The notes under the pieces were generated by a model. That model worked only from the letters and a program-made list of their open reading frames with translations, did no database searches and was not told the origin of the DNA. From assembly GCF_006345805.1 (NCBI RefSeq), contig NC_043002.1, forward strand, positions 58,900,001 to 58,964,000: DNA of 64,000 nucleotides, in the 5' to 3' direction. Numbering within the stretch: the first letter of the stretch is position 1; each line of letters starts with the position of its first letter. The stretch is from Octopus sinensis. Lineage: Eukaryota. The position numbers and the translations under genes are program-made. Shown here piece by piece: positions 9,816 to 64,000 of the stretch.

Positions 9816-12800
9816 ATAATTAAGAGAAATAACCTCTATTAAGTAATTCAATTGATAGTGAAATATATTATCTATAATAAATCATATAGAAAAAATTTAA
9901 ATATATTATAATAAATATTATTCTAAAAATCACTAAATTAAATAAACATTGTCACCCCCCACCCCCACTGCTCGACAACAAGTATTGGTGTATTTACCTC
10001 CCTGTAACTTAGGATTTGGCAAAAAAGAACAGTAGAATAAGTACCAGGCTTTAAAAAAAAAGTACTGGGGTTGATTCATTCAACTAACAGTTCTTCGAAG
10101 TGGTGCCCCAGCATGGCCACAGTCTGACGACTGCAACAAGTAAAAAATACATAATAGAAGGTAATAGTTGGTTGTCAGAGAAAAGAGGAAAAATTTGGGA
10201 TAAGTGTCAGGGATATATATTCCAGGGGTGCTAGGTGTGGGCTGCACACCCATCAAAAATGGCAAATTCATTATTAATATTAACCTTACTCGTTAAATTA
10301 AACCACAAATCTTAATGGAAAACTTTTGTTATACCCTTGCTTGAAATTGGTGGCATTGGGTGGGGCAGCATACCCAGTACAACAGCCACCGTATGCCATT
10401 GATAAGTGTCACTACTGGCTAGCCCCTGTGATGTCCAGCATGTTATAAGCCCTGCTGAGGAACTGGTCAGCAAGCCCTCAGCGTCCCACCTTGATGGGAT
10501 CACACATTGGTTGCCACCGATTGCTTTGAAATAGCCCTACCGCTCTGCATATTTCCTTCTAGCTGCAAAAGATTCAGTGAGGAAATACTTGTAATGGGAG
10601 ATTTCTCTCTTTGATTTAATGCCACAGACACTAACGTTAAACAGCAGCAGCACCCCAACTAAATACCACCATGGGCGGTGAAAGAATTCATATGAAGAAG
10701 ACAGCAGCGATTTACATAATAATACAATGAAAGAAAAACAACACAGTTACAAGATTTTACCAAGAATAAATTAGTAAATATATAAATGATAAACAAAACG
10801 AAAAAAAAACAAAAATAAAATCAAAACATGAATGGTTGTACATTGTAGAGATATCTTTTAAAATTACACAAACGGAAATGAAAAGATAGATAAGAGAGAG
10901 ATAAGCTGTTGCTTTTAATCTCTTGAGACTAGTAGAAGGCGATGTTAAATGTAAAAGAAGAACCAATTTAGATTTTTAAAATATATATACATATATGTAT
11001 ATGTATATAATTATGTCTTTCAGTTAAATGTTTTTAGGTGGAGAGTAATCTTGTAGATGACTTTGGATGAAAAGAAATTTCAAATAACTCGAGTTAACTT
11101 CTGTACAATAGTTACATTAACGCTTAATGCATTTAGTGTGAAGAGCATTAGAGACAACTAGAAATAATTGTGTTGAGGAAAAAGAAATAATAATGTTAGT
11201 CAATACATATTTTTTTATCATTATTTTGGTAAAGATAGGGGAAAATTCTGAACAGGTTTTGGTCCTTCAAAACCTGGCACTCTGTTGGTTATGACAAGGG
11301 TTCCAGTTGATCCGATCAACGGAACAGCCTGCTCATGAAATTAATGTGCAAGTGGCTGAGTAATTCACAGACACACATACTCTTAATGTAGTTCCCAGGG
11401 AGATTCAGCATGACACAGAATGTGACATGGCTGGCCCTTTGGATTACAGGTACAACTCATTGTGACCAGCTGAATGGACTGGAGCAACGTGAAATAAAGT
11501 GTCTTGCTCAAGGACACAATGCTCTGCTGGGAATCAAACTCATAACCTTACAATCATGGATCAAATACCCTAACCACTAAGCTATGTGCCTTCATGCCTC
11601 GATCTTATGATCTCATCAGAAAAGTATAGACCTCACTGTACATCTTGAAGTAGTGATGAATCATTAAATAAATGTACAAGTCTGTACACTGGTTGGCAAA
11701 GCCATGTAATCCCTCTACAGAAAGTAACCTCTTCATCATTATTAATCCTTGGACATAACTGTTTTGAGTCCCAGGGCTCATGGGACTGGTTGCCATGCCA
11801 TACAAATGACTGAAATCACAACATCCCCACTGAACAGGATGCCAATATGTTGCAGGGTTACTCATTTCCAGATGAGTGAATTGGAACGATGTGAAATGAA
11901 ATGTTTTGTCCAAGAACACAAAATACCTCCTAGTCTGGGAATTGAAATCCCGATCCTGCAATCATAAGTACGACACCCTAACCACAAGCCCATGTGTTTT
12001 CACTTCATCGATAATGACCTAAGGTTAATTAACAACAACTTGGTCAACTTTAGGAGAAGAGTTACTAATCTTTTGAAGATTTCTATGAACACTTGTAGCT
12101 CATGAATAAAAAATGTGTTTTCTGACTTCTTATCACATGTGTCATATTATTATTATGCTACAAATCAAACCAAGAAGACCATCCTTTAATATCCTACAAA
12201 GGGACCACACCTGCAATTTCTTAGTCAACACTGAATTCATTGTCCTTCAACAGCAATAAGGAACTATGATGATGATGATAATGATGAATCAAGACTAACC
12301 ACACAAAATGTAAACAGGATGTATAATTTTATTTTCTTTCTTTTTGGAGGTAAACAGAATACCACAAACTTTTCTTTGTCTTCCCAACCACAGGGTTCTC
12401 AGTTCAGTCCCACTGTATGGCACCTTGGGCAAGTGTCTTCTAATATAGCCTCGGGCTGACCAGAGCCTTGTGAGTGGATTTGGTAAATGGAAACAGAAAG
12501 AAGCTTGTATATCAAAATATATCTGAAGCTTGTATATCAAAATATATCTGTTAGAGTGTGGCACTTCTTCACACAGCTGTCTTCATCCATTTGCCATACC
12601 CGTGCAGTCGTCTCTCTTGCACACTACATCTGATGCCTCTTATGCCCAACTTTTCTCACAAAATGCTTACACTCTGTCATGCATGCACACTGACATTACA
12701 CATCCAGCGAAGCATACTGGCTTCATTTCTTACAAGCTTACACTTGTCCTTGGCAGTCACAGCCCATGTTTCACTGCCTTTCACTCTGAGAGAGAAGCCC

Positions 12801-15743: not shown

Positions 15744-15746
<3 letters not shown>

Positions 15747-16297
15747 GCCCTGATGCAGTACCAGACAGTGGCTCTCATGGTTTCTAATCTTAACTGATTG
15801 GAAGTGTTACCATGTACATGTTTTGTCTTGGTATAAAAGATGGGCTACAGCAAATATTCTGCTCAATACCACAGATTTGCTTGTCAGTTGTTTGACCTTA
15901 ACCAGTTGAGTATGTCCCTTAGTGGCTGATGATATGTGCATCTCTGATCACGAGCAGAAGTAGTGGGGGAGCATCATAGCCATGTGTTGAGAGGAATTCT
16001 TTGGGGTTTGGATAATTCACCTTTGAAAACATAGGTGGTTCATCAAACATCTTTAAACAACTCTTATTTGAGGACCTGTTGAGCAAGATGGGCTACTCAA
16101 CCTGAAGAAAATTCTAACTGGGCCCCACCTGCTAGGTCATGCACAATTTTTCTTGATATGAGATCACCATGTCATGCACATATGGTTGTGATGCATGTGC
16201 CTGTTGTACCCTTATCGGACAAGTAGTCATGATGGTTTTACTGGGCTTCATATATTTCACCCTAGTGTCACTTTGATGGCATGCACTGCTCTCTCAC

Positions 16298-16298
<1 letters not shown>
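15744..16298 (+). repeat. ~550-bp interspersed repeat flanked by (AAT)n; other copies at 42815-43302 (+), 51074-51610 (+), 58898-59340 (-)
   Basis: Four mutually alignable copies sharing e.g. gatttgcttgtcagtt, ctaactgggcccc and gctctctcactcaataat. Confidence 0.85.
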
Positions 16299-16338
<40 letters not shown>

Positions 16339-38081: not shown

Positions 38082-38195
38082 TTATTCCGCTTCTTCATCT
38101 TCCTCCTCCTCCTCTTCTTCTTCTTCTTCTTCCGAACCGGCAGATCCTGACTCAGAAGCTTCCGGAGAACTGAGGATTTCTTCATCAGATGGTAA
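38082..38195 (-). CDS. SSRP1: SSRP1 last coding exon: LPSDEEILSSPEASESGSAGS(E)11DEEAE*
   Basis: Acceptor ccttttcctctAG; in frame with the previous exon; resembles the SSRP1 acidic tail; tandem TAA TAA. 3' UTR extends leftward; no canonical AATAAA seen in the next ~400 nt. Confidence 0.88.
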   Translation of the reverse strand, partial: LPSDEEILSSPEASESGSAGSEEEEEEEEEEEDEEAE

Positions 38196-39523: not shown

Positions 39524-40048
39524 TAAAAGTGATTTAAGCTAAAACCTTCCATTGAAATTTCATGTTAGTTTAAGTTCAAAACACCTGCTCAATGATAAAG
39601 TTACTTTAATAAATTTTACAGCACCTGATCCTGCAGGTGCTGGCCCCACATAAGAACACACCTGCGCTCTTTATCTTGTAACTTTGAGATTTCAATAACA
39701 TATCGCTTTTTTTTTTTTTTTATTGAAGTCATCAGACTGTGTGGCCATGCTGGGGCAACACCTTGAGGAAATTTAGTTGAATGAACTGACCCCAAAAAAC
39801 CAGACAAACACACATAAATATACAACAGGTTTCTTCCGGTTTCCACCTACTAAATTCACTCACAAGCCTTTGGTTGGCCCGAGGATATAGTAGAAGACAC
39901 TTGCCCAAGGTGCCATGCTGTCGGATTGAACCCAAAACTATGTGGTTGGGATGCAAACCTCTTTCCACACAGCCATGCCTATACCTATATAATCATTGAA
40001 AAACTGTAAACCAGTTGACATAAAACATGTCAGTGAAGCATTATTTAC

Positions 40049-42263: not shown

Positions 42264-43619
42264 CTAGAAACACAAAGGTAGAATACTTTCAAATTCAGAA
42301 ATTTCAAAGAAGAATGGTGGGAACTTTGAGAAGGGAATGATTTTAGCTTCAGTTTCTTCAGTCAAGAGCTTTAATTTACTATCATCTTTAAATATTTATC
42401 TTTTTGGAACATTTCTAATTGAACAGACTTCTGCCTGTTCTTGTTAAATAGCTATTTGTCAGTTCTGTTAGGGATAGATCTTAGGTGAAGAATCTGCTAA
42501 CTGAAGAGAAACCTAGGTTCTGCAACTCCAGAAGAGACAGGATTCAGTCTGTTTGGAGGCACACAGTTATACATTTTCCATGCAATGATAGTTAATAATC
42601 TGGTGCTGAGGACATGGATAATATGATCAACAAACTCAACATGGCCATCAAGATCTAGTTTTGCCAAATCTTATTGTCCAAACACATTGGTATCTATTAT
42701 AAGAGTAGGCATGGTTTTATGGTTGAGCAGTTTGCTTCCTAGTGGAGGGGTGTTCAAGAATCCTGACCTGGAAGAGGCCTAGATCCTTCAGAGAGTTAAG
42801 AGTTAAGAGCTGAAACATTATTTTGTCTTGGTATAAAAGATGGGCTACAGCAAATATTCTGCTCAATGTCACAGACTTGCTTGCCAGTTGCTAGATCTTA
42901 ACCAGCTGAACATGTTCCCTAGTGGCTGATGATATGTGCATCTCTGATCATGAACAGAACTAGTGGGGGAGTATCACAGCAATGTGGTGAGAGGAATTTT
43001 TGGGGGTTTGGATAATTCAACTTTGAAAACATAGGTATTTTGCTCAACATCCTTAAACAATTCAGAGACCTTTTGAGCGCGATTGGCTATTCAACCTGCA
43101 GAAAATTCTAACTGGGCCCCACCTGCAAGGTCACAAACAGTTTATCTTGATATGATATCACTATGTCACGCACATATGGTTGTGATGCATGTATCTGGTG
43201 TACTCTTATCAGACGGATAGTCATGATGGGTATACTGGTATGCTGGGCATTTATATATTTTACCAAAGTGTCACTTTGATGGCATGCACTGCTCTCTCAC
43301 TCAATAATAATAATAATCCTTTCTACTATAGGCACAAGGCCTGAAAATTTGGAAAGGGAGATAGTTGATTGCAATGACCCTAATGCTTAACTACTATTTA
43401 CTTCACTGACCCTGAAAGGATAAAAGGCAAAGTTGACCTCAGTAGAATTAGAACCCTGAATGTAAGGACGAACAAAATACCACTTAGCATTTTGCCCAGC
43501 ATGCTAACGATTCTGCCAGCTCATCACCTTTTGAATATCAGATGTTAAAAGTTACTGAATAGTAATAACAACAATAGCAGTGAAATGGTATGGCACATCA
43601 TTAGTAAATGCCTGAAATT

Positions 43620-44270
43620 GGCACAACACAAATACAAATGACACCATGACAATGTGGTAAGAATGATCCATTGGGAACTCTGAGGAAATCATGGCCTACC
43701 AAGAGCAAAGACATGGTATGAGCAAACTCTAGAATGAGTTACCGAGAATGAGAATTACAAAATCTTGTGGGAATGTAATGATCCACTGCAATCACCTGAC
43801 CAGACATCAGAAACCTGATATTGTTGTGGTGAATAAAAAAGAAAGAACATGCATGATAATCAACATAGCATGCTCTGGTGATAACAGAATCAATGTGAAA
43901 GATGCCCCGGTGACAACAGGATCAATGTGAAAGAAGAAAGAAAAATAAACAACGACGATTTGAAGTGGGAAATACGAGTGTTGTGGTCAATGAAAAGACT
44001 TGTCGTGATACCAATAGTAATTGGTGCACTTAGAAGTATCAGCACTCAACTATCAACATGGCTGAAAAAGATTGGTGCAAGTGTGAAGGTAGAACACCAA
44101 CAAAAATCAGCATTGCTTGGAAGTGCAAGAATTCTTCGCAGGGTTCTTGAAGCTTGACCAGTAAAGCATGTATCACTTTAGTCAGTTGGCTGTGGACAGC
44201 TGACACTTTCCATCATACCCAGCAAAATAAGCTGTGAGTTGCAAAGGCAATAATAATAATAATAATAATA
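43620..44270 (+). mobile_element. 3' end of a non-LTR retrotransposon with a restriction-like endonuclease (R4/Dong-like), degenerate
   Basis: HDNVVRMIHWEL, KPDIVVVNKKERTCMIINIA and VIPIVIGAL...LQKSALLGSARILRRVL-type motifs; short 3' UTR, then an (AAT)n tail. Confidence 0.8.
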
Positions 44271-46012: not shown

Positions 46013-46289
46013 CTGAAAAAATAAATAAAAATCATTAATTATTGGTGATAAAAGCAGCATTTTATATCAAAAGGTAATCAGTATAGTTGCAGGAGTTGCT
46101 GTGTGGTACGTAGCTTGCTTATCAACCACATGGCTCTGAGTTCATTCCCACTGCGTGGCACCTTGGGAAAGTGTCTTCTACTATAGCCTCAGGCCGACCA
46201 AAGCTTTGTGAGTGGATTTGGTAGACGGAAACTGAAAGAAGCCCATCGTATATATGTATATATATATATATGATGATGATGATATATAT

Positions 46290-46940
46290 ATATATATATA
46301 TGACAAAAGGCCTCTCGCTCAGAGTAAAAGGCAGACTGTATGATGCATGTGTACGTATAGTCATGCTACACGGTAGTGAAACATGGGCTGTGACTGCTGA
46401 GGATTTGCGTAAGCTTGCAAGAAATGAAGCCAGTATGCTTCGATGGATGTGTAACGTCAGTGTTCATAATCGACAGAGTGTAAGTACCTTGAGAGAAAAG
46501 TTGGACCTAAGAAGCATCAGTTGTGGTGTGCAAGAGAGACGTTTGCACTGGTATGGTCATGTGACGAGAATGGCTGAAGATAGTTGTGTGCGAAAGTGCC
46601 ACACCCTAGCAGTTGAGGGAACCTGTGGAAGAGGTAGACCCAGGAAAACATGGGACAAGGTGGTGAAGCACGACCTTCGAACTTTAGGTCTCACCAAGGG
46701 AATGACTAGAGACCGAGACCTATGGAAGTATGCTGTGCGTGAGAAGACCCGGCAAGACCAGTGAGAACATAACCTGTGGCCTACATACCTTTCTTTCTTG
46801 GGAAGCACGACCTTCGAACTTCAGGTCTCACCAAGGAAATGACTAGAGACTGAGACCTATAGAAGTATGCTGTGCGTGAGAAGACCCGGCAAGACTAGTG
46901 AGAACATAACCTGTGGCCTACATACCTTTCCTTCTTGGGA
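46290..46940 (+). mobile_element. RTE LINE 3' fragment with a 137-bp tandem duplication (46666-46802 / 46803-46939)
   Basis: LYDACVRIVMLHGSETW...RRLHWYGHV...GRGRPRKTW, typical of the RTE ORF C-terminus. Related fragments at ~12560-12950 (-), ~27800-28560 (+), ~29340-29500 (-), ~52630-52905 (+), ~62580-62840 (-). Confidence 0.85.
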
Positions 46941-47479: not shown

Positions 47480-49211
47480 GTGTGTATGTGTTTGTCCCCC
47501 AACATCGCTTGACAACCAATGATGGTGTGTTTACGTCCCCATAACTTAGCGGTTCAGCAAAAGGGGACCAATAGAATAAGTACTAGGCTTCCAAAGAATA
47601 AGTCCTGGGGTCGATTTGCTCAACTAAAGGTGGTGCTCCAGCATGGCTGCAGTTAAATGACTGAAACAAGTAAGAGTTTATCCAACTTAACATAACACCA
47701 AACACTGCATTATTAACCTTGAGAGATCCTATTTTATAGGTGCTTGATGCATAAAAGAACACACACATATATCTTAGCAGATGAGAATTGTCTATAATGA
47801 ACGCCAGAATTGCAACATCTTGTGATTTCATTCAAATGGAAACCATCAGTGGGGTGCCAGTCAAATCTCACTGTTATGATACATAGATCATCAGCATCTT
47901 TTCAGACACTGATGTTGCAAATAGCCAAACAAGCTCATTAAAAATTGATTATTAAGCAACATAAGCAGTATTAACACCAAAAAGGTAATCTTTGAATCCA
48001 ACTTAACCTGGGTGCCTTGTTAGAACACGGAATACTGCACTTTTAGCCTTGAGAGATCCTCTCTTGTAGGCACTTGGTCCATCAAAAGCACGGACCAATA
48101 GATCAGATGCCTGAGTGATTAAGAATTGATTTCAGGTTTAATCCCGTTGTTACACCTGCCTAAGTTATTTTTTTATTGGGAGCTGCTGTTCCTAAGTATC
48201 ATGTGGCTTGCTTTTGAGGCTGGAAGGCTTTACTATCTCCATCCACTTCCCAGAATACTCTGGGAATATTTATTCATGGCACCAACACAAAGAGTAGTCA
48301 GTAACGTAAACCTTTTAGCATTTAAACCAACCCTTATCTGGCCCCAATATTTTACTTGTGTTTTGTGTTCAACTTGGCCAGATCCAGCCTCTCACATCTA
48401 CCTTTTACCATTTACCTGTTTCAGTCATTTGACTGTGGCCATGCTGGGGCACTACCTTGAAGGGCTTTTATTGAATTAATTGACCATATTACTTATACTA
48501 TTGGTTTCTTTTGCTGAACTGCTATGGTACTGGGAGGTAAACAAACCAACACTGGCCAGCAAGTGATGGTAGGGGACAAGCACATACACACAAATATGTG
48601 ACAGGATTCTTTCAGTTTCTGTCAACCAAATCCACTCACAAGGCTTTGGTCAACCCGAAGTTATAGTAGAAGACACTTGCCCAAGGTGCCATGTAGTGGG
48701 ACTGAACCCAGAACCACGTGGTTGGGAAGAAAGCTTCTTACCACACAGCCATGCCTGCACCTGTCCTCATGAGATATCTTCTACAGTTGGAGAGTTTTAA
48801 TAAACCAAAAATTTATGTTGTATAGTATTTAATAAATGCCACTGGCCATTCTGGAGTAATTCCTTGTAACACATTTCTTTTAGTATTCTGTCTATTCACA
48901 ATAGTCTTTTCCTAATCCAGCAGGAAAAGCCCCTTTTTTTAACCCTTTGTAACCATTTCTCCTAGTTATTTGACAGTCTACCAACATGCAACAGACCTAA
49001 TTGAGTTTAAACATGGGTTGGATGGTTTGATAGGACTGGAAGGGCACTAAGAACTGCTTCAAGCTCCAATGTGTGTGCTAGGTGCATATTTTCGTGCCAG
49101 GTGTCCAATGGAGGTTGTCGTGCAGCTTTGCAAAACTACAAGCCTCAAGCGGGGAGCGGGGCACTTCTTTCAGTTAAAAGAGAAAAGTAAATTAAAAAAA
49201 TGGTAAATTAC

Positions 49212-49341: not shown

Positions 49342-50670
49342 CTGCACACAAAAAAGGAACGAGTGTCAGAGATATCACAAGGAAAAAAACAGTTGCAAAA
49401 GTGGTAAGAATACATCGCAGATACCTCTAAATCCACTGCTGTTAGTAATATCTGCAACATTGCTTACACTTAAATTTTAAAAATAAATTCATCATCATCA
49501 GTGTTTCCCAGGGCTAAATAACAGTAGTATTCTTCCCATTTATGAGACTGTCACATTAAGGCTTCTTTCAGTTGCCATTTATCAAATCTACTCGCAAGGC
49601 TTTGGTCGGCCCAAGGGTATAGTAGAAGCCACTTGCCCAAGGTTCCACGCAGTAGGACTGAACCCAGAACCATGTGGTCGGTAAGCAAACTACTTACCAG
49701 ACAGCCACTCCTGTGCCTATATGGTAATAATAAATATATTACATATACTCATAACTCAAATCCTCTTTGGGCTGATAATATTTTGGCTTCAGCCTTAAAC
49801 CTATTCACAAATTTTACGTTGCTTTATCATGAGTAGTGGAGGCACGTGGCTTCGTGAGTAGGGTGTTTGAATCATGATCATAACATTGTAGTTTCGATTC
49901 ATGGACTGGACGATGCGTTGTGTTCACGAGCAAAACACTTCATTTCATGTTGCTCTACTGTGACAGACTGGTGTCATTGAAACAAGGAACCCAGGCATAT
50001 GAGACTATAGGAGTCTATTATGAATACTGTTGGCAACTTTAGTTCCGGTTTTGTTTAATTATTTGCAATTTAGGTTAGGAACTTTGAAGAGAATTGGTCA
50101 ATACCATAGTACTTGGTTGGTACTTTATTTCATCGACATCAGAGGGATGAAAAGCAAAGCTGACTTCAGCAGGATTTGAAAAGCATAATGCAAAAAACCA
50201 GAATAAATACAGCAAGGCAATTCGGTTTACTGCCAACCACAACATATGGCTTTTGTGTTGAATTGGTTTTCAAAAAAACCTAACAAGCAAATAGGTGCAG
50301 ATGCGACTGTGTGGTATGAAGCTTTCTTCTGAACCAGATGGTTCCTGGTTCAGTCCCACTGCATGGCACATTGGGTAAGTGTCTTCTATTATAGCCTCAA
50401 GCTGACCAAAGCCTTCTAAATGGATTTGATAGATGGAAACTGAAAGAAGCCCATCATATGTGTGCATGTGTCTGTCTCTCACCACTGATTTGCAACTTGT
50501 ACTAGTGTGTTTATGTCCCCATAGCTTAGCAGTTTGTCAAATGAACATGAGAGAATAAGTACCAAGATTTAAAAGCCCTTCAAGGCAGTGCCCCAGCATG
50601 GGCACAGTCTAAGGACTGAAACAAAGGGAAAAAATAAAACAAAACAAATATATAATTTAGAACATCTTAC

Positions 50671-51073: not shown

Positions 51074-51610
51074 ATGCCCTGATGCAGGACTTAACTGATT
51101 GGAAGTGAAGTATTATCCTGTACATTGTTTTCTCTAGGTATAAAAGATGGAATACGGCAAATATTCTGCTTAATACCACAGATTTGCTTGTCAGTTATTT
51201 GACCTTCACCAGTTGAACATGTCCCTTGGTGGCTGACGATATGTGCATCTCTGATGACAAGCAGAAGTAGTTGGGGAGCATCATAACCAGATGTTGAGAG
51301 GAATTCTTTGGAGTTTGGATAATTCACCTCTGGAAACATGGGCGTTTCATTCAACATCCTTAAACAACCCTTATTGAAGAACCATTTGAGCAGGATGGGC
51401 TACTCTACCTGAAGAAAATTCTAACTGGGCCCCACTTGCGAGGTCATGCACTGTTTACTTTGATATGAGATCAGGTAGTGCACATGATTGTGATGCATGT
51501 GCCTGGTGCACTCTTATCAGACAGGTAGTCATGATGCGTATACTGGGCTTCGTATATTTTACCCCAGTGTCACTTTGATGCCATGCATTGCTCTCTCACT
51601 CAACAATAAT
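51074..51610 (+). repeat. (AAT)n-flanked repeat copy ending 25 nt from an SSRP1 donor site
   Basis: Aligns with 15744-16298; ends at ctctcactcaacaataat (51610), donor GT at 51635. Confidence 0.85.
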
Positions 51611-51635
51611 AAAAAATACAAAAAGCCCAACCTAC

Positions 51636-51857
51636 TTTTCAATACCAACAAACGTGTAAGTATTACTAGACTTGGTTTCTACATCAAAATCAAAGGACCT
51701 AGTGCTGCCAGCACTTCGGGCAAAGTTAACAGAAGAGACTTCATCAAATCGAATGTGAATGGGAGGTTTGTGAACAAAGATTAGTCCTCTTTCCAATGGA
51801 TACAATAAACCTGTAGCTGCTTTGTAAGAACAACCAATCGCCTGGTCTCCTTTTTGG
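51636..51857 (-). CDS. SSRP1: SSRP1 coding exon (Rtt106-like PH domain): (S)QKGDQAIGCSYKAATGLLYPLERGLIFVHKPPIHIRFDEVSSVNFARSAGSTRSFDFDVETKSSNTYTFVGIE(K)
   Basis: GLLYPLERG, HKPP and TRSFDF motifs; tgttttacAG / GTaggt; 222 nt, phase 2/2. Confidence 0.97.
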
Positions 51858-53710
51858 CTGTAAAACAACAGAAAATACATTATTTTAATTTCATCTAAAT
51901 CCAGAAATACCAACATGGATGGAATGAATATATATATATATATATACTAACCCTTCAATTAATACCACTAACCCCCATACGTTCCATACACCATTCACAT
52001 TACTGTATTGTATCTGCCCTAATTGCACCAAATCAAGAACTACTTACCTCCCTTACAAATTTTTTTTACTCAGGGACTAATAAACCCGACACCGTTTGGT
52101 AATCAGTGCACATTCAAAGCCAGTGAACAGTAATTTTACGAAACCGGTATACCTTTGAACCTCTTTAACAATTCACAATAATGACTTTTATTACTTTTAT
52201 TCCTACCTCAGTTCATCTAACTGTATATATCAATCGTTTCTTTTCATAAAAAGCCTTTACTTTTTTTGATTTCCAATATGCATTTTCGCTTATTTTTCCT
52301 CTTACTTTCCCCTTACATTACCACATGTAGTTTCTATTTTCTTTTTGTAACATATTTCTATTATATATATACACACACACACACAAATATATATATATAT
52401 AAACATTTAAAAATTCCTCAAATATCTTAATTATAGTCATAAGAGATTAAAAGTAATAAACTATCACAGACACAATACATCATAAATGGATATAAACCAG
52501 AAAGAATAGCATGTCAAGGTAATCTCTACTGCTGTTCTATAGGAATTATAGCCAGCACTGACTCTTGTTATGGCATTTCATATCTGAGACATCAGATATA
52601 AACAAACAATGAGACTGAAGTTCTTAAGCATATAAGGCCGAAAATGTCGCTAGAAGCTAGGATCACCAAGCATAGATTGGCATATTTCGGTCATATTATG
52701 AGAAAATCCCTGGAAGACATCATGCTCGGAATGGTCAGTGGCAAGAGAGGAAGAGGCCAACCAAGAACTCGCTGGCTTGACACCATCAAGAGTGATACTG
52801 GAATGGACATAGCCAATCTGAAAGAAGCGGCCCAGGATAGAACTGACTGGAGGACACTGATCCAACTAGTGACCGAGAGTCAACTTCGACTGAGTGGATA
52901 GAGAGAGAGAGAGAGACTGAAGATGAAAAAAGGGTAATGCGCATATATGATTTTGCTCCTTCATTGGAAACTTTCTGACCCCTTAACCCTTTTGATATCA
53001 ACCCAACTGAAACTGCCTCTAGTTCTGTAATACAAATGTCTTGTTTTTGAAAGTTCTGAATTAAAATCTTCCACCAAACCTTAGTCACAATTTATGTTCT
53101 TAACACTAGCTTAATGATAGCTAAATTATTTTTATAATAAATTATTTTTTAAATTCTGTGTTATATTTAAAATTAATTGAAAGAAACACAGAGCATCTCA
53201 ACAGAAATATGGTAAAAAAAAAAAGGGTTATCATCCAAGAACAATATTGCTTAAATAGCTACTAAATACAGTGGTGTAACATCATTAGATATACCAAAGG
53301 CAGTGAGCTGGCAGAATCATTAACACACTGGGTGAAATGCTTAGTGGTATTTCATCTGTCTTCATGTTTTGAATTCAAATGCCACTAGAGTCGACTTTGT
53401 CTTTCATCCTTTCAGAGTTGATAAATTAAGTACCATTTATGCACTGGGGTCAATGTAATCGACTGGCTCCCTCCCAAAAAATTTCGGGCCTTGTGTTTAG
53501 AGTAGAAAAGATTATTGGATATATCAACTTTACACATTAAACACATTCCTGGAAGTTGGTACATAAATATTAATGACTCATAGGCACACTGTATTTCGTT
53601 AGGCAACCATAATATACTAAAAGGTATATTAAATGTTTTTCATAAGTCAACACCATGTCATTTTTCCACAGATGTGCAAAGAACAAAAAGGAGGGCTGTT
53701 TAGAACTCAC

Positions 53711-53839
53711 CTGACAAAAACACCTGGAACAGTAATTTTACGGTTAACAACAGCTTTGAAAATTTTGCTAATGACTTCATACTCTGTACCAGACATCTCA
53801 CGGGTTAATTTTCCTTCATATTTCTTCTGTATTTCTTCT
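53711..53839 (-). CDS. SSRP1: SSRP1 coding exon: (E)EEIQKKYEGKLTREMSGTEYEVISKIFKAVVNRKITVPGVFV(S)
   Basis: NRKITVPG motif; acceptor ttcttattcaaAG (AAG type), donor GTgagt; 129 nt, phase 2/2. Confidence 0.95.
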
Positions 53840-55291
53840 CTTTGAATAAGAAAGAAAAATAAAACAATAAAAAACAAAATAAATATGAAAATAATTCAAG
53901 TTTTGGATTCATGAATGACAAAAAAAAAAAACTTGGCTCTGCACTGTTTATTGGATTGAAATCCAGGCTGGTTCCATGTAAAGGGCACCGGCGCTGGTGC
54001 TATATAGAAAGTATCCAACACACTCTGTAAAGTGGTTAGTGTTAGGAAGGGCATCCAGCCATTGAAACCTTGCCAAAATCAAGCATTGGGCCTCACAGCA
54101 GCAAAGTGGCTGAGTTGCTTTTGAATATTGGGCCTCATGGAGGCAATGACCAAAACCTTTGGCATTGCATCGTGCCCGAGAAGAAGACCCATCAAGCTGA
54201 ACAGTCACACAAATTGGCGCCCATGTCACTGTGTTTGGTGTTAGGAAGGGCATCCAGTCATAGAAAACCATGCCAAATCAGACTGGAGTCTGGTGCAGCT
54301 TTCTAACTTAACTGGCCAGCCTGCTCAAACCGTCTAACCCATGCCAACATAGACAATGGATGTTAAATGATGATGATGATGGAGCTTGACACAGCTCTCC
54401 AGCTTGCTAGCTCCTATCAAACTGTTCAACCCATGCCTACATGGAAAACTGACGTTAAATGATGATGACGAAAATATCAGTTAGATCATTATATGTAGCA
54501 GATAATTTTAGCCACTTAGAATTAAGAAGCCCCGAACCAATGGTCTTCAACAAGGGCCATATGACCCATGAGGGGTTGTAAGATTTTGTTCATGAAATTC
54601 ATCAGCAATAAATTGGTTACACTTATTCAACAGAAAAAATAATTCTTTTTAACAATATTTTATATAAAATTCTTCTGATATTTAATTATAAAAATACTAT
54701 TGGATTATTTAAACATTGTATGGCTATAAGGGTCCACCTGCGTAAGATAGGATTCAAAAGGATCCTATAGGTAGAAAATGGTCGAGAACCACTATCCTAA
54801 ATGCTCAAAACCACACAAAATTCTGGCTTAATCTCCTCAAATATCTGTCTTAAAAATGGAAGGGTACAACACATTGGATATGACACTCCTGGATTAAATG
54901 AAAAATGTAACTGAGATGGTCACAGATGGAATGACTTTGACCAGAGTTCTGACTGACTACAGAAATGACCTGGTGCCAAGGAATTTTTATGTGCAAAAGG
55001 TAAAACTGTTTCATGTATGGTGCTGAATGGTAGTGAAATGTGGACATTACCAAACCCAGCAGAAACCACCTCAGGCTCTGTAATAAAAATGTCTTGTTTT
55101 CAGAAGTTTTGAATTAAAATCCTTCACCAAACCTTAGTCACAATTTATGCTCCTAACATTAGCTTAATGGTAAAAAAATTATTTTACTAAATTCTTTGTT
55201 ATATTTAAAGTAATTGAAAGAAACACAGAGCATCTTGACAGAAATATGGTAAGAAAAGGGTTAAAATATATAATAGAGAAACAATTCTTAA

Positions 55292-55512
55292 CCCTTTTGA
55301 TATCAACCCGGCTGAAACAGTCTCTGACTCTGTAGTACAAATGTCTTGTTTTGATAAGTTTTGAATTAAAATCTTCCATCAAACCTTGGTCACAATTTAT
55401 GCTCCTAACACTAGCATAATGATAACTAAGTTATTTTACTAAATTCGTTGTTATATTTAAAGTAATTGAAAGAAACACAGAACATCTCAACAGAAATACA
55501 GTAACGAAAGGG
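55292..55512. mobile_element. piggyBac-type MITE of a second family; related copies at 52987-53227 and ~55050-55260
   Basis: TTAA|CCCTTT...AAAGGG|TTAA; internal sequence shared among the copies. Confidence 0.8.
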
Positions 55513-56188
55513 TTAAGCATTGATTTGTAGACTGGAGAGAAATGAGGCAAGCATTATAAATATACATCACACTGTTATGGAACCCCTCTGTACTACTTAT
55601 ACCCCTCTACATTGTTGGTAGGTTCCAATACATCTTCAGCACCATTTATTTCTCTCTCTCTCACCTGTTTCCATCTTTCTCTAACTCTCTCTCCTCTTCC
55701 ACTCCTGGGGTAGCCAAATATCTCCCCTATAGTAAGACAACTATTATATTCTGTCCCTCTATCACACTATCCTCTTGCTTGGCACACAGCAATGTCCCTC
55801 AGTTCCACCCCTACCCTTTCAACTAAGTAGTCTTTGTTTTGCAAGTTATTTGGCAACCCTGCTGATGCTGGTGCCATGTAAAAAGTACCTGTGTCAGTGC
55901 TTTGTCCATGGAGCACAAGAGATAATAAATTAAAATTAAGTGCAGAGTGAAAGAGTTGTGTGATGATGGCAAAAAGTGCCTTGGGGCAGAAGAAATGAAA
56001 AGAAGTTGTGATGTTAATTATCAGAATGTTTGTGCTCTGCCCAGGTATGAAGACACAAGGCCAAGATAAGTAAGAATTCAATATATTGTAAACAAATTCA
56101 ATTCATATCTGCACAAAAAGACGTAAATTAAAATGAGAGAGGGAACGTTTGATTCCAAAACCAAATCTTTAGGAACAAGCATACTTAC

Positions 56189-56292
56189 TCTGATAAGGCT
56201 AGTTCTGTGGTCATCTCGTCGTCTTTGTTAAAAAGTAAAATAAGGAAGTGATAACGCGTCTGACCTTGCTTTATAGGTGGATCCAAGCTGAC
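56189..56292 (-). CDS. SSRP1: SSRP1 coding exon: VSLDPPIKQGQTRYHFLILLFNKDDEMTTELALS(E)
   Basis: SLDPPIKQGQTRYHFL motif; tctttcAG / GTaagt; 104 nt, phase 0/2. Confidence 0.97.
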
Positions 56293-56442
56293 CTGAAAGA
56301 CAAAGATCACAAATAGAAAGACCATGGGTTATATTGTTACTGGTTTACATTTAACAACAGGGTTGGCGTGGTCAAGAGGTTTGCTTCCAGACCACATGGT
56401 TCTGGGTTCAGTGCCCACTATGTAGCACCTCGGCCAAGTATA

Positions 56443-56880
56443 GTTCTACATTTAAGAGATGAGGAATTATGAGCATTATTTACATTGTTTACATTTGACG
56501 GATATTTGTCTTCATCTTGTTTCTTGTTAACACATTTCGGCTGATATACCCTCCAGCCTTCACCAGGTGTCTTGGAGAAATTTCGCACCTGGGTTCTCAT
56601 TCCTAAGGTATTTTTCGATGTTATTATTATTATTATATTATTATTATTATTATTATTCAGGTCACTGCCTGGAAACGAACTCAGAATCTTGGGGTTAGTA
56701 GCCAGCACTCTTAACCGCTACACCATATGCCCGTGACTTGAATAATAATAACATCGAGAAATACCTTAGGAATGAGAACCCAGGTTTGAAATTTCCCCAA
56801 GACAAATGATGAAGGATGGAGGATATATCAGCCGAAATGTGTTAACAACAAACAAGATGAGGACAAATATCCGTCAAATA
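56443..56880. mobile_element. Palindromic tRNA-headed hammerhead retroposon (copy 3), inserted in a SINE within an SSRP1 intron
   Basis: Same junction (56729-56734); right arm lacks the tRNA head; host SINE sequence gcacc/ttgg.caagt is duplicated on both sides; cores mutated (CUGGUGA, AUGAUGA). Confidence 0.75.
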
Positions 56881-57644
56881 ATGCACTTGGGCAAGTGTCT
56901 TCTACTATAGCCTTGGGCCAACCAAAGCCTTGTGAGTGGATTTGGCAGGTGGAAACTGAAAGAAGCCTGTCATGTATATGTATGAAAATGTGTTTGTGTG
57001 TATATGTTACTATCTCTATGACTTCACATCATGTGATACTTGTGAGTGCCACCACTATGCAAGCGATATCCTTCCTTAGCAATCTTCCAGGAAAACATGT
57101 TGGCTATCATTATCACCATCATGATCATCATGTAACATCTGTTTTCCATGCTGGCATGGGTTGGACATTTTTGACTGGAGCTGGAAAGCTGCAGAGTTGC
57201 GTGGCTTGGTTTCAATGGTTGGATGACAACCACTTCACAGCTTGGTGCTTCTTGGTTGGCAAAAGAAAGGGCATCCAGTCGTAGGAAATCTGCCTCATCC
57301 AAGCAAGCATGGAAAAGTGGAAGATAAAACAATGATGATGATGATGATACTACATATAAAGAGCAGCAAGCTGGCAGGATCGTTAGCACACTGGGCAAAA
57401 TGCTTAGCAGTATTTTGTCTGCCATTACATTCTGAGTTCAAATTCTGCTGAGGTTGACTTTGCCTTTCATCCTTTCAGGGTTGATTAAATAAGTACCAGT
57501 TATGCACTAGGGTCGATGTAATCGACTTAAACCCTTTGTTTGTCCCTTCTATGTTTAGCCCCCTGTGGGCAATAAAGAAATAGATATTACATAAAAAGTT
57601 ATCATGAAATTATAAAGATGGACATAAGGGGCCAAACCACTTAC

Positions 57645-57780
57645 CACAAAAAACATCTGTCGTCTGTCATTGTGTGGAAGTAAGAAAAGCCGAAGTACAG
57701 TGGCATAAGGAATTTTGTAATCAAATGTTTTACCATGGAGTTGGAGAAATGTAGGGTAGATCTTGATATCATATCGACCT
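57645..57780 (-). CDS. SSRP1: SSRP1 coding exon: (R)[45 protein letters not shown]
   Basis: Closely matches the SSRP1 middle domain; ctgtttccAG / GTaagt; 136 nt, phase 2/0. Confidence 0.97.
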
Positions 57781-58601
57781 CTGGAAACAGAAAGAAAAAA
57801 AGAAATTAGATGAGAGCAAGCAATTTACAGAAATACATATATACATGCATCCACACTGTAAAGTGGTTGGCATTTGGAAGAGCATCCAGCTAAAACTATG
57901 CCAAAGTAGAACTTGTTAGTGCCATGTAAAAAACACCCAGTTCACTATGTAAAGATGGCATTAGGAAGGGCATCCAGCTGTAAAAAAAAACATGCCAAAA
58001 CAGACCTCACTGGTGCTGGTGCCATGTAAAGACGCATCCTTAATGCTCAGAATAATTCCAAGTGTTTATGAACGTCTTGTAGTGTCCCATGGGTCAATAC
58101 TGACATCTTACTGACCTCTGTTATTGTGGATGGGCAGATAGTACTTAGCAAAGAACATGCAGTGTTTGGATAATCAGAGCAAAATTTAAATGGGCTGGGC
58201 TGCATAAGAGACAGAGAGAGTGTGTGTGTGTGTTGTCTACGGAGTCTGTTGCTGTCTTTCCTGTGTACATGTCCCAACCAAAGTAAATTTCTATCAATGA
58301 GGATTTCCATCATCAGGGGTAGATCAGCATACCGGAAGATCTCTTCGTTCTTGATCTTGCCAAACAGAGTGATAGTAATTTGAAAAAGAAACTGCGGAAG
58401 ACTTAGACTAAGATTGAAAAATACTGCAAAATGGAAAATGAAGTGGAAAGGAATAGATTATGATAAATGGCAAACTCAAGTGAAAAACCAACCAGTGTGG
58501 AGAAAACTAATCAAGTCATGCTAAGCTACAAACAGTCACAGGTGTGACAACTGCAGGTAAGATATGTGATATGAGTTTGAGCTACATAGAAATCAATATA
58601 C

Positions 58602-58881
58602 CTGGGTGTAAGACATTGTACTTGATCGAATGTAACAATAGCATCGCCTGTAGCCTGGATAATGTCTGCTTTGGACATGACATTTTTGTAGAAGTCTTGC
58701 ACGACATCCTTTTCCAGTTCAGATGGGATGTGAAAGCGCAGCTCCATCAACGACACAGCAGCATCATCGTTCTGGTGAAATTCCAAAGTGACTTCATTTT
58801 TGTTTGTTGTTGCATGTGAGACATTGGTCAAAGGAATTTCGAAAGCCATGTTTTTCTCAACTTCAAAATTGAGGGCATTAC
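58602..58881 (-). CDS. SSRP1: SSRP1 coding exon: (G)NALNFEVEKNMAFEIPLTNVSHATTNKNEVTLEFHQNDDAAVSLMELRFHIP...KADIIQATGDAIVTFDQVQCLTP(R)
   Basis: KNEVTLEFHQNDDA and QATGDAI motifs; ctttttacAG / GTatat; 280 nt, phase 1/2. Confidence 0.97.
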
Positions 58882-58897
58882 CTGTAAAAAGGAGAAC

Positions 58898-59340
58898 ATT
58901 ATTATTGAGTGAGAGAGAAGTGCATGCCGTCAAAATGACAGTGGGGTACAAATATATGAAGTCCAATATACCCATCATGACTGACCATCTGATAAGGGTA
59001 GTCATGATGGATACATTCATCACAACTATCTGTATGACATGGTGACCTCATATCAAGATAAACAGCACATGACCATGTAGGGAGGGCCCAGCTAGAACTT
59101 TCTTCAGATCGTAGCACATCCCACACAAAAGGTCTCTGAACAAGGGTTGTTTAAGAATGATGAATAAAACACTCATGTTTCCAGGAGTGAATTATTCAAA
59201 CCCCAAAGAATCCCTCTTAACACATGGCAATGATGCTCCCCCACTACTCCTGCTTGAGATAAATGTAAGGGACATGCTCAATTGGTTAAGGACTAGCAAC
59301 TGACAAGCAAATCTGTAGTATTGAGCAGAATATTCGCTGC
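58898..59340 (-). repeat. (AAT)n-flanked repeat copy, opposite orientation, 16 nt from an SSRP1 acceptor
   Basis: Plus strand reads attattattgagtgagagag..., the reverse complement of the family 3' end; exon starts at 58881. Confidence 0.85.
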
Positions 59341-60944
59341 AACCCTGGCAGGTTTTATGTGGCAACAGCAAAGTTACAGGTAACTTACAAGATAAGAACC
59401 CCGCTGCCAAGTGATGAAGGGTTAGAGTGTGAATAGAGAGACAGAAACAGTTTTTCAGTGAATGCGAAACCTTAGCAGAGAGAGAGAGAGAGAGAAAAGA
59501 GATGATAGAGAATAATGTGATGGGGTGGAATACACTCCAGTTACTGGGAGGTGTATATAAATGGAACCAAGGATTGGAGGGGATGAGTGGGGTGGAAAGC
59601 TCATGAGAGTGTGAAAGAGAATTGTATTTGTCAAGGTGGTGAGCTGGTAGAATTGTTAGCACGTCAGGCAAAATGAATAAAGGCATTGCATCCATCTTTA
59701 CAGTCTGAGTTCAAATTCCACTGAAGTTGACTTTGCCATTCATCCTTTTGGGGATGATGAAATAAGTACCAGCTGAAAACTGGGGGGGGAGTCGATGTTA
59801 TTCACTTATTTCCCTCTTCGCAAATTTGAAGCCTTGTTCCTGTAGTAGAAAGGATTATTTGTCCATTGGTTAACCATTTACCTAATTAATTATCTGATTA
59901 ATTGTTTGGTTAATCAATCAGTCATCAGTCAGCTAGATTAATCAATCCCTTTGCCACCATTTTTCAACCTCATTAATGACATACTCCTGCTACTCCAACG
60001 AGTTCACATCAAGAATCTTGCAAACCGAATACGAAAAATCCAAATTGTTTACTAATATTAAAACTGGAAATTGCATCATCAACCAGACTCTTGGATGTTG
60101 TTATACATCGCTGGTCACAATGCACTTTTGCATTGTTTTAGCTTGATTAAAGCAGGTCAACATTTGCCCTGACTGAAAGCTAGTTTGTCAGGGTTACCCA
60201 TTTATAACTGAGTAGACTAGAGCAGTGGTTCCCAAAGTGGGAAGTACTGACCCTTGGGGGTGGTGGAAAGATCCATGAGGATGATAATGGGGTGATAGAT
60301 GTAAAATCTAAAATATTAATAGGTTAATTAGGTTTAAGTTTTATTTGGAAATACAGTTGCTTTGAATTTGCTGTAGGAAGTGGTCTATATTTATTTCTTT
60401 ATTGCTCACAAGGGGCTAAACAAGGACAGACAAAGGGATTAAGTCAATTATATCTACCCCAGTGCGTAACTGGTACTTATTTAATCGACCCCAAAAAGGA
60501 TGAAAGGCAAAGTCAACCTTGGTGGAAATACCGCTAAGCATTTTGCCCGGCGTGCTAACGATTCTATATTTGTGGTGGGGAAGGAGGGGGTGCTAGGAAT
60601 GTGGCCTGGGTATCGAGGGGATGACAGCCTGAAAAAGTTTGGGAACACCTGACTAAAGCAACATGAAATGTAGTGTTTCACTCAAGAACAGAGGGCATCA
60701 CTTGGTCCAGGAATTGAACTCAAGATCTAGTGATTGCGAATGCAACACCCTAACCACCAAGCCATGGCCTTCACAAAACTGAAAATAATTATTTTAGATT
60801 CTGAAAATTAAAATTAAGATAAATTCTAGAAAAAAAAAAAAAACTGGTAGAAATTGAAAAAATTGAACTGCAAAAATCTGGAAGTTTACAACTCATATTA
60901 GAAATGTAAATAAACATTTGTAAAACAAACAAAAAAAAACTCAC

Positions 60945-62245: not shown

Positions 62246-62906
62246 CTTCACTCTTGTTCATTCATAACATTTACTTCTATTCCAATCTATCATCTCTCAT
62301 TCCTACATTTAATCTCCCACCGCTTACATTTAATAAAATACATAGCATACATTGAAATCATAATATACAATTTAATAAACTGTAAAACAGCTTAATAACA
62401 CATTACAACTCATAGGTGATAGCAGCGTTGATCCAAGACATTCTTCTACACCTCCAGCACATTGTTTCTCATGGGAGCAAATGTGACTGATAAGACCAAT
62501 ATGAGATACACAGATCCTGTGGCACTGATGGTGAGACTGAACAACAGCCTCAAGGAGTAGATGGTGATATCTCCTCCTCTCTTCATGCAGTCACTAGTGT
62601 CTGGTTTGGAAGCTCTCTACTCCAGCAGCATACAGATTTCCAAGCCTTCTGATTAACAGCCAGGGCCACAAACTGATTGGGGGTGACAGTACAGAAAATG
62701 AGAAACTGCTCAAGATGATCATGGAAATGAAGCTTTGGATGTCCACAAGGCCTACCTCAAGTCTTGATCTCACTGAAGAAAACTGTCTTTGGGAGTTGGT
62801 TGCTCAACATCCGAGCCACATGACCAACCCACACCTGATACAAACTAACATAAACAATAGTTAAATAATAATAATAATTATGATAATAAAAATAACATAA
62901 ACTTAC

Positions 62907-63917: not shown

Positions 63918-64000
63918 TTACAGAATCATTTGGGGGACATAACTTTCACAAGCCAGGAAGAGGTCGAAACTGACATTTCAAAGTTCTTTGCTTTGAAACC
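63918..64000 (+). mobile_element. Mariner transposase C-terminal fragment (LQNHLGDITFTSQEEVETDISKFFALKP), cut by the window end
   Basis: Resembles the mariner C-terminal LQN.L.G..F...EEV......FF..KP pattern. Confidence 0.6.

What the first reader, a model, noticed from the sequence alone, without database searches (positions are those of the whole stretch)
51074..59340. Inverted repeat pair abutting the outer splice sites of a five-exon SSRP1 block: circRNA/dsRNA geometry
Seen: one copy of the (AAT)n-flanked repeat ends 16 nt upstream of the acceptor at 58881. An oppositely oriented copy begins 25 nt downstream of the donor at 51636. The two proximal ends are complementary (...ctcactcaataataat vs attattgttgagtgag...), over ~440 nt at roughly 75-80% identity. 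Pairing would bring the 51636 donor next to the 58881 acceptor. The enclosed exons total 280+136+104+129+222 = 871 nt. Established: flanking inverted repeats promote back-splicing, and ADAR editing antagonises it; coleoids edit heavily. Inference: expect an 871-nt SSRP1 circRNA, or skipping of the block, which would shift the frame (phase 1 to phase 2) and probably trigger NMD. The branch point for the 58881 acceptor probably lies inside the repeat (CUCAC-like), so the duplex could also mask it.
Basis: partly seen in the sequence, partly recalled or inferred. Interest (0 to 1): 0.7.

Follow-up and report, generated by a model that had tools for sequence, protein, structure and literature searches.

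The report
Inverted retroposon pair flanking SSRP1 exons
Two old, oppositely oriented copies of a microsatellite-targeting mobile element sit right beside the outer splice sites of five exons of the octopus SSRP1 gene and could pair in the RNA, but they look like neutral passengers and no circular RNA could be shown or ruled out here.

Summary
SSRP1 (Octopus sinensis, minus strand) has five exons of 280+136+104+129+222 = 871 nt. These are bracketed by two inverted copies of one repeat, 16 nt from the acceptor and 25 nt from the donor. The arms are 78% alike over 440 nt.

The repeat is a 565-nt non-coding retroposon that inserts into (TAA)n microsatellites. An O. bimaculoides-specific copy sits inside an (ATT)n tract that is empty in O. 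sinensis. That targeting fixes each copy's orientation.

The pair is the strongest inverted repeat in the gene, but a third copy in a later intron pairs almost as well.

Both arms predate the O. sinensis/O. bimaculoides split. They evolve at the rate of neighbouring intron sequence. Their complementarity equals what independent decay predicts (78.4% observed, 78.6% expected). In O. bimaculoides a nested transposon splits the upstream arm. So there is no sign of selection.

The circRNA and exon-skipping predictions are logically sound: the back-splice junction reads GIEK-stop, and skipping gives a premature stop. They cannot be tested here, and published octopus data report only 296 circRNAs.

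Most likely this is a neutral, probably ADAR-edited, long-range duplex with little or no back-splicing.

The parts
58898..59345 (-). Upstream arm. A 5'-truncated copy (consensus 99-565) of the (TAA)n-targeting retroposon, in sense orientation to SSRP1, lying in the intron before exon A. Its (AAT)3 tail ends 16 nt from the acceptor.
   Evidence: 82.6% to consensus by blast; 87% over aligned columns. The orthologous copy is present in O. bimaculoides.
58882..58897 (-). 16-nt spacer, which is the polypyrimidine tract plus the AG acceptor of exon A (GTTCTCCTTTTTACAG). The nearest good branch-point motif, CUCAC (A at -29), lies inside the repeat.
58602..58881 (-). Exon A, 280 nt. It is the 4th coding exon of isoform X2, assuming one coding exon lies upstream of the window, and is entered in phase 1.
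57645..57780 (-). Exon B, 136 nt.
56189..56292 (-). Exon C, 104 nt.
53711..53839 (-). Exon D, 129 nt.
51636..51857 (-). Exon E, 222 nt, left in phase 2. The donor is AAAA|GTAGGT.
51611..51635 (-). 25-nt spacer between the exon E donor and the tail of the downstream arm.
51077..51612 (+). Downstream arm. A near full-length copy of the same retroposon with a roughly 30-nt internal 5' deletion, antisense to SSRP1, in the intron after exon E. Its tail points at the exon.
   Evidence: 89.4% to consensus. The orthologous copy in O. bimaculoides carries the same internal deletion.
42815..43317 (+). Third copy (consensus 72-565 plus tail), antisense to SSRP1, in the intron after the first HMG-box exon. 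It is an alternative partner for the upstream arm.
   Evidence: duplexfold -528 against -543 kcal/mol; 282 bits.
15745..16308 (+). Fourth copy, full length, with (AAT)12-13 on both sides. It lies about 22 kb beyond the last SSRP1 coding exon.
44249..44269 (.). Empty target site: an (ATT)n/(AAT)n microsatellite 147 nt downstream of the donor of the first HMG-box exon. In O. bimaculoides it holds a younger, lineage-specific copy of the element.

Best explanation
The feature consists of two independent, ancient insertions of one 565-nt non-coding retroposon. The element is SINE-like and its head is of unknown origin. It integrates specifically into (TAA)n/(ATT)n microsatellites, as Dong (R4-clade) LINEs do.

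The element always lands with (AAT)n on its own sense strand, so the polarity of the microsatellite it hits decides its orientation. One hit went into a tract just upstream of exon A and gave a sense copy. The other went into a U-rich (AUU)n tract just downstream of exon E and gave an antisense copy. That produced an inverted pair whose tails abut the outer splice sites of an 871-nt, five-exon block of SSRP1.

Shown: the anatomy, the target specificity, the shared ancestry in two Octopus species, and the neutral pattern of evolution.

Inferred: in the pre-mRNA the arms can form an imperfect duplex of about 440 bp, with uninterrupted helices of up to 27 bp. This is the most stable long-range pairing in the gene. 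It would form only in transcripts where the upstream intron is still unspliced once the partner arm, 7.3 kb downstream, has been transcribed. Its most probable fate is ADAR hyper-editing followed by removal with the introns. Back-splicing to an 871-nt non-coding circle, or skipping of the block followed by NMD, would be at most a rare by-product and not a selected function.
For: Repeat family and its ends.

Microsatellite targeting:
- (AAT)n lies on both sides of nearly all full-length copies.
- The filled site in O. bimaculoides can be compared with the empty (ATT)n site in O. sinensis.
- Dong elements target TAA microsatellites, including in a snail (PMC3812793).
- Dong-R4 LINEs are recently active in O. 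vulgaris (PMC13282606).

Non-coding nature: the longest ORF in the consensus is 59 codons, and there is no tRNA or Rfam match.

Age: both arms are orthologous in O. bimaculoides.

Neutrality:
- Ortholog identity of the arms is 90.3-93.1%, against 90.7-94.4% for the introns that align end to end.
- Arm-to-arm identity is 78.4% against 78.6% expected from independent decay.
- In O. bimaculoides the upstream arm is split by a nested TTAA-flanked element.

Duplex strength and rank.

Low circRNA prior in octopus: PMC9699675.

Repeat stability is a poor predictor of circularisation: Liang & Wilusz 2014, PMC4201285.

Both RefSeq isoforms contain the whole block.
Against: - No RNA evidence of any kind could be examined, so a real circRNA or regulated skipping is not excluded.
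- The geometry is unusually favourable. It is the strongest inverted repeat in the gene, neither arm has a partner within its own intron, and both arms lie within 25 nt of the splice sites. Miniature introns with 30-40-nt repeats suffice for circularisation in human cells.
- A two-species comparison has little power to detect weak constraint. The 3' part of the upstream arm (93.1%) sits near the top of the intronic range.
- The element is locally clustered, with 4 copies in 64 kb here against 0 in 200 kb of random genome. I cannot explain this.
- The Dong-like partner LINE was not identified.
Confidence: 0.7

Rival explanations
1. The inverted pair is a working circRNA or exon-skipping module. 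Pairing loops out coding exons 4-8. This gives an 871-nt circSSRP1 and/or a frameshifted NMD isoform that lowers SSRP1 output, and ADAR editing tunes the balance.
For: The geometry and frames are confirmed. It is the strongest inverted repeat in the gene. Neither arm has a competitor within its own intron. Reverse-complementary matches promote both back-splicing and skipping in C. elegans (PMC8330042). Short repeats close to splice sites suffice in human minigenes (PMC4201285).
Against: - No expression evidence exists.
- Only 296 circRNAs were found across 18 octopus tissues.
- The literature search for circSSRP1 returned nothing.
- Arm evolution is neutral and complementarity is as expected by chance decay.
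- The upstream arm is disrupted in O. bimaculoides.
- The third copy competes for the upstream arm.
- The predicted branch point, and possibly the polypyrimidine tract and donor, would be buried in the helix.
Confidence: 0.15
2. The duplex acts mainly as a splicing brake. By sequestering the branch point of exon A and the donor of exon E, it causes intron retention or delayed splicing of SSRP1 transcripts, without circularisation.
For: The CUCAC branch-point motif lies within a 20-bp near-perfect terminal helix. duplexfold extends pairing through the spacers, with CCUUUUUACA pairing to UGAAAAGUAGG. Strengthened hairpins can inhibit circularisation.
Against: This rests on energy minimisation only. 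The spacer pairing is a U-run against an A-run and may be fortuitous. The upstream intron can be spliced before the partner arm is transcribed. SSRP1 is a housekeeping gene whose annotated isoforms are fully spliced. There is no sign of constraint.
Confidence: 0.08
3. Assembly or annotation artefact. The inverted copies or their positions are mis-assembled repeats.
For: Repeat-rich 2.7-Gb genome. The O. bimaculoides locus contains assembly gaps.
Against: Both arms, with the same junctions, the same internal deletion and the same flanking unique sequence, occur in an independent assembly of another species. The exon model matches RefSeq proteins exactly.
Confidence: 0.01

Closest known systems
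Inverted Alu (IRAlu) pairs flanking circularised exons in human genes, e.g. ZKSCAN1, HIPK3, EPHB4 (Liang & Wilusz 2014, PMC4201285; Zhang et al. 2014 and Ivanov et al. 2015 from my own knowledge)
   Same: Two copies of one retroposon family lie in opposite orientation in the introns on either side of a set of internal exons with canonical splice sites. Cross-exon pairing is stronger than any pairing within either flanking intron.
   Different: No back-splice product is known here. The arms are longer (about 440 nt) and far closer to the splice sites (16 and 25 nt), so the branch point lies inside the helix. The host is a heavily editing coleoid in which circRNAs are reported to be scarce (PMC9699675).
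[quoted passage not shown]
   Same: It has the same predicted dual outcome, a circle or a skipped linear isoform, from intronic complementarity.
   Different: The zip-2 match is 13 nt and conserved across nematodes. Here the match is a decaying transposon pair with no conservation signal beyond shared ancestry.
Dong and other R4-clade non-LTR retrotransposons specific for (TAA)n microsatellites (Xiong & Eickbush 1993; Kojima & Fujiwara 2004, as summarised in PMC3812793)
   Same: The element inserts inside (TAA)n tracts, has microsatellite on both sides and a fixed orientation relative to the repeat strand, and shows 5' truncations typical of target-primed reverse transcription.
   Different: This element is 565 nt and has no ORF, so it must be non-autonomous. 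Its autonomous partner was not identified and no shared 3' end was shown.
Long intronic dsRNA from inverted repeats as ADAR hyper-editing substrates (inverted Alus in primates; intronic hairpins in octopus, PMC9699675)
   Same: It is an imperfect duplex of hundreds of bp with helices of 20-27 bp, located in introns.
   Different: Editing was not observed here. The arms are 7.3 kb apart, whereas a 150-bp local hairpin in the intron between exons B and C (56480-56890) is a kinetically better substrate.

Membership tests
Inverted-repeat-driven circRNA locus | Reverse-complementary repeats in both introns flanking the circularised exons | tested here: met
   Arms 58898-59345 and 51077-51612; 78.4% over 440 nt; duplexfold -543 kcal/mol against -175 +/- 11 for shuffles.
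Inverted-repeat-driven circRNA locus | Canonical acceptor and donor at the block boundaries | tested here: met
   ttttacag|GTAATG and TGAAAA|gtaggt.
Inverted-repeat-driven circRNA locus | Cross-exon pairing not out-competed by pairing within one intron or with other partners | tested here: inconclusive
   There is no partner within either flanking intron, but the copy in the later intron (42815-43311) pairs nearly as well (282 against 315 bits; -528 against -543 kcal/mol).
Inverted-repeat-driven circRNA locus | Observed back-splice junction (RNase R-resistant, divergent RT-PCR or junction reads) | not testable with these tools
   No RNA-seq access. The protein-database look-up found no octopus fragment. 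No circRNA list is held for PMC9699675.
SINE (pol III-transcribed, LINE-dependent retroposon) | Short, non-coding, interspersed, high copy number | tested here: met
   565-nt consensus; longest ORF 59 codons; at least 8242 first-look candidates genome-wide; 5'-truncated copies.
SINE (pol III-transcribed, LINE-dependent retroposon) | Head derived from tRNA, 7SL, 5S or snRNA with an internal pol III promoter | tested here: not met
   ARAGORN found no tRNA. Rfam at E<=10 gave no tRNA, 5S, 7SL or snRNA match. I therefore call it 'SINE-like' only.
SINE (pol III-transcribed, LINE-dependent retroposon) | 3' end shared with an autonomous partner LINE | not tested
Dong-type (TAA)n-specific retrotransposition | Integration inside (TAA)n microsatellites, with repeat on both sides | tested here: met
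   (AAT)n directly abuts both ends in nearly all full-length copies. An O. bimaculoides-specific copy splits an (ATT)n tract that is intact and empty in O. sinensis.
Dong-type (TAA)n-specific retrotransposition | Fixed orientation relative to the microsatellite strand | tested here: met
   In all aligned copies the element's sense strand carries (AAT)n.
Dong-type (TAA)n-specific retrotransposition | Mobilised by an R4-clade RT/endonuclease | not tested
   Context only: Dong-R4 LINEs are recently active in O. vulgaris (PMC13282606).

The most novel reading that the evidence does not exclude
The (TAA)n-targeting retroposon repeatedly lands in AU-rich microsatellites next to exon boundaries. Three of four independent SSRP1 insertions in the two species lie within about 150 nt of an exon with the tail facing it. 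On this reading the element systematically seeds splice-site-abutting inverted pairs in octopus genes. At SSRP1 this would give an ADAR-gated switch between linear mRNA, an 871-nt circRNA and an NMD isoform that sets FACT dosage.
Probability: 0.05. Interest if true: 0.7.

Novelty: new member of a known kind. Interest (0 to 1): 0.25.

Why it matters
If the pair really drove back-splicing or NMD-coupled skipping of an essential chromatin factor, it would be a clean invertebrate test case for the interplay of transposon-derived dsRNA, ADAR and circRNA biogenesis in a heavily editing animal. As it stands, the evidence is that of an ordinary, neutrally decaying inverted repeat pair.

The more concrete gain is incidental. 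The repeat is a microsatellite-specific, non-autonomous retroposon, with a direct comparison of a filled and an empty site between two Octopus species. This explains why its copies are flanked by (AAT)n and why their orientation follows the local microsatellite strand.

Tried and rejected
1. tRNA or other small-RNA origin of the repeat head. ARAGORN and Rfam were negative, so I did not file it as a tRNA-SINE.
2. A direct trace of a back-splice or truncated isoform in the 5.8-billion protein collection. No octopus fragment of 159-506 aa was found. The SSRP1 cluster at 90% identity or more holds no Logan-derived member at all. The null therefore has almost no power, and I ran no further search on the skip isoform.
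3. A circRNA list in the supplements of PMC9699675. Only the count (296) is held.
4. Literature on circSSRP1. None was found.
5. Global MAFFT alignment of whole introns between species. It is unreliable where there are large indels: for example the upstream arm scored 54% because of misalignment. I replaced it with local alignments.
6. A second batch of 20 random genome samples to tighten the copy-number estimate.
7. The idea that local richness in (TAA)n targets explains the clustering of the element. It is not supported: 0.30 per kb here against 0.23 per kb in random sequence.
8. Selection for complementarity. Rejected: 78.4% observed against 78.6% expected.
9. One literature look-up matched 'sinensis' instead of SINE and gave nothing.
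Full report
**Locus and gene**

The window is G000:C6:58900001-58964000 of a 2.72-Gb, 13,516-contig assembly. The gene on the minus strand is SSRP1, the FACT subunit. A 14-exon model that I built from splice sites is 100% identical over its whole length to XP_036359846.1 'FACT complex subunit SSRP1 isoform X1 [Octopus sinensis]'. The first coding exon lies upstream of the window and the last is at 38085-38195.

Their lengths are 280+136+104+129+222 = 871 nt, and all have AG/GT boundaries. Their 289-residue translation aligns without a break to human SSRP1 residues 119-407 (E 1.4e-134). The block is entered in phase 1 and left in phase 2.

- Skipping gives ...TRFREMNMENCMILSVARN-stop within the next exon, which is a classical NMD configuration.
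- The back-splice junction reads GIEK-stop.
- The circle has no endless ORF.

**The inverted repeat**

The repeat finder and a self-blast both recover the pair. The arms share 345/440 aligned positions, which is 78.4%. The upstream arm's (AAT)3 tail ends 16 nt from the exon A acceptor. The downstream arm ends 25 nt from the exon E donor, and both tails face the exons.

**What the repeat is**

The genome search gave at least 8242 first-look candidates, with full-length hits about 80-84% identical to the upstream arm. Alignment of 20 copies, plus 10 copies extended upstream, defines a 565-nt unit running from ATGCCCTGATGCAG... to ...GCTCTCTCACTC(AAT)n.

- It is non-coding: the longest ORF in the consensus is 59 codons.
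- It has no tRNA or Rfam match.
- 5'-truncated copies exist, so I treat it as a retroposon, but only 'SINE-like'.
- Nearly all full-length copies have (AAT)n directly on both sides.

A direct test of the insertion site was possible. O. bimaculoides has an extra, younger copy (94% to consensus) at L031 23446-23926. It sits in the middle of an (ATT)n tract. The orthologous tract in O. sinensis is intact and empty, reading ...TCTTTTATTATTATTATTATTATTATTGCC....

The element therefore targets (TAA)n microsatellites, which is the specificity known for Dong (R4-clade) LINEs, including one from a snail (PMC3812793). Dong-R4 LINEs are among the recently active LINEs of O. vulgaris (PMC13282606). The partner LINE was not identified here. 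Because the sense strand always carries (AAT)n, orientation is set by the polarity of the microsatellite that is hit. This gives a simple origin for an inverted pair.

**Copies in the window and competition**

Four copies lie in the 64-kb window:

| Position | Element strand | Relation to SSRP1 |
|---|---|---|
| 58898-59345 | minus | sense; intron before exon A |
| 51077-51612 | plus | antisense; intron after exon E |
| 42815-43311 | plus | antisense; intron after the first HMG-box exon |
| 15745-16308 | plus | about 22 kb beyond the last SSRP1 coding exon |

In a self-blast of the whole gene, the finding's pair is the top inverted repeat at 315 bits. The second is the same upstream arm with the 42.8-kb copy, at 282 bits. 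All other pairs, from other and far more abundant repeat families, score 223 bits or less.

duplexfold gives -543 kcal/mol for the finding's pair, -528 for the alternative pair and -175 +/- 11 for shuffled controls. About 380 pairs form, with uninterrupted helices of up to 27 bp. A near-equal competitor does exist, though.

**Evolution**

The O. bimaculoides SSRP1 locus (L031) carries both arms at orthologous positions with the same junctions. The downstream arm even has the same internal 5' deletion. Both insertions therefore predate the species split, which is put at 13-33 Myr in PMC13282606. Divergence from the consensus, at 12.7% and 10.5% of aligned positions, is in line with that.

Nothing suggests selection:

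- Ortholog identity of the arms is 93.1% and 90.4% for the two parts of the upstream arm and 90.3% for the downstream arm. The introns that align end to end score 90.7-94.4%.
- Arm-to-arm identity of 78.4% equals the 78.6% expected if both copies decayed independently from the consensus, and they share only 2 non-consensus states.
- In O. bimaculoides the upstream arm is split by a nested element of at least 1.7 kb, with a TTAA duplication and 14-bp inverted ends CCCTTTCGTTACCA (piggyBac-like).
- The spacer to the acceptor differs by an 11-nt indel between the species.

**Mechanistic reading**

The upstream intron is 2063 nt and the downstream one 895 nt. The partner arm is transcribed 7.3 kb after the upstream arm. 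Pairing therefore needs transcripts in which the upstream intron is still unspliced at that point (inference).

The only good yUnAy motif at a normal distance from the exon A acceptor is CUCAC, with its A at -29. It lies in the last 20 nt of the repeat, which form a near-perfect helix with the other arm. Energy minimisation even extends pairing through the spacers, with the polypyrimidine tract pairing to the exon E end and donor.

If the duplex forms, it would occlude signals that back-splicing itself needs. Liang & Wilusz showed that repeats next to splice sites in miniature introns can suffice for circularisation. They also showed that stability does not predict it, and that stronger hairpins can inhibit it (PMC4201285).

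In octopus, total RNA-seq of 18 tissues mapped to this very genome gave only 296 high-confidence circRNAs, which the authors ascribed to ADAR activity. Most editing lies in introns and 3'UTRs (PMC9699675).

The most likely consequence of the pair is therefore intronic hyper-editing with no lasting product. I put the chance that a deep data set shows a reproducible arm-dependent circSSRP1 or skip isoform at roughly 15%.

**What could not be done**

No RNA-seq, Logan nucleotide search or further octopod genome was reachable. The one indirect look-up, for protein fragments, was a low-power null.

**Verdict**

This is a new instance of a known kind of arrangement. An incidental result of modest interest to transposon specialists is that the repeat is a (TAA)n-microsatellite-specific non-autonomous retroposon.

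Noticed in passing
window 56480-56890 (minus strand, intron between exons B and C): A near-perfect intramolecular hairpin of about 150 bp (arms 56493-56631 and 56741-56879, 92% complementary; MFE -236 kcal/mol, z -27). Its loop holds a tRNA-like stretch followed by (AAT)n. ARAGORN and Rfam do not call it. It is a stronger local dsRNA, and so a stronger ADAR substrate, than the long-range pair.
   Followed up: partly
L031 (O. bimaculoides) about 9985-11739: A nested insertion inside the upstream arm with a TTAA target duplication and 14-bp terminal inverted repeats CCCTTTCGTTACCA (piggyBac-like). It is absent from O. sinensis and contains an assembly gap.
   Followed up: partly
window 58882-58897 against L031 12013-12039: An 11-nt indel between the repeat tail and the exon A acceptor. 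O. bimaculoides reads ATTCTCCTTTTACTGACTGTTTTACAG, which has an extra CUGAC motif with its A at -12. O. sinensis reads GTTCTCCTTTTTACAG. Polarity is unknown without an outgroup.
   Followed up: no
window 15745-16308, 42815-43311, 51077-51612, 58898-59345; random loci L032-L051: The element is clustered: 4 copies in this 64-kb window against none in 200 kb of randomly sampled genome. That gives Poisson P(>=4) between 5e-5 and 0.017 for 8,000-41,000 copies. (TAA)n microsatellites are about equally frequent in both samples, at 0.30 and 0.23 per kb.
   Followed up: partly
window 44249-44269, 62864-62878, 51611-51635: (ATT)n tracts in the gene's sense orientation sit shortly downstream of several SSRP1 donors, at 147, 29 and 25 nt. 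Three of four independent insertions of the element in SSRP1 across the two species lie within about 150 nt of an exon, with the tail facing it.
   Followed up: partly
window 53293-53516, 57336-57593, 59625-59859, 60386-60530, 43302-43535; also 39793-40004, 46081-46401, 48402-48764, 49559-49747, 50289-50575: Two other short interspersed families are far more abundant, with 20-29 hits per 200 kb of random genome. They form many weaker inverted pairs across SSRP1 exons. One example is 60387-60519 with 57451-57587 (138 nt, 85.5%), which brackets exons A and B.
   Followed up: partly
upstream of window position 64000: The alternative first coding exons of SSRP1 isoforms X1 and X2 are not in the window, so the gene runs off its high-coordinate end.
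   Followed up: yes
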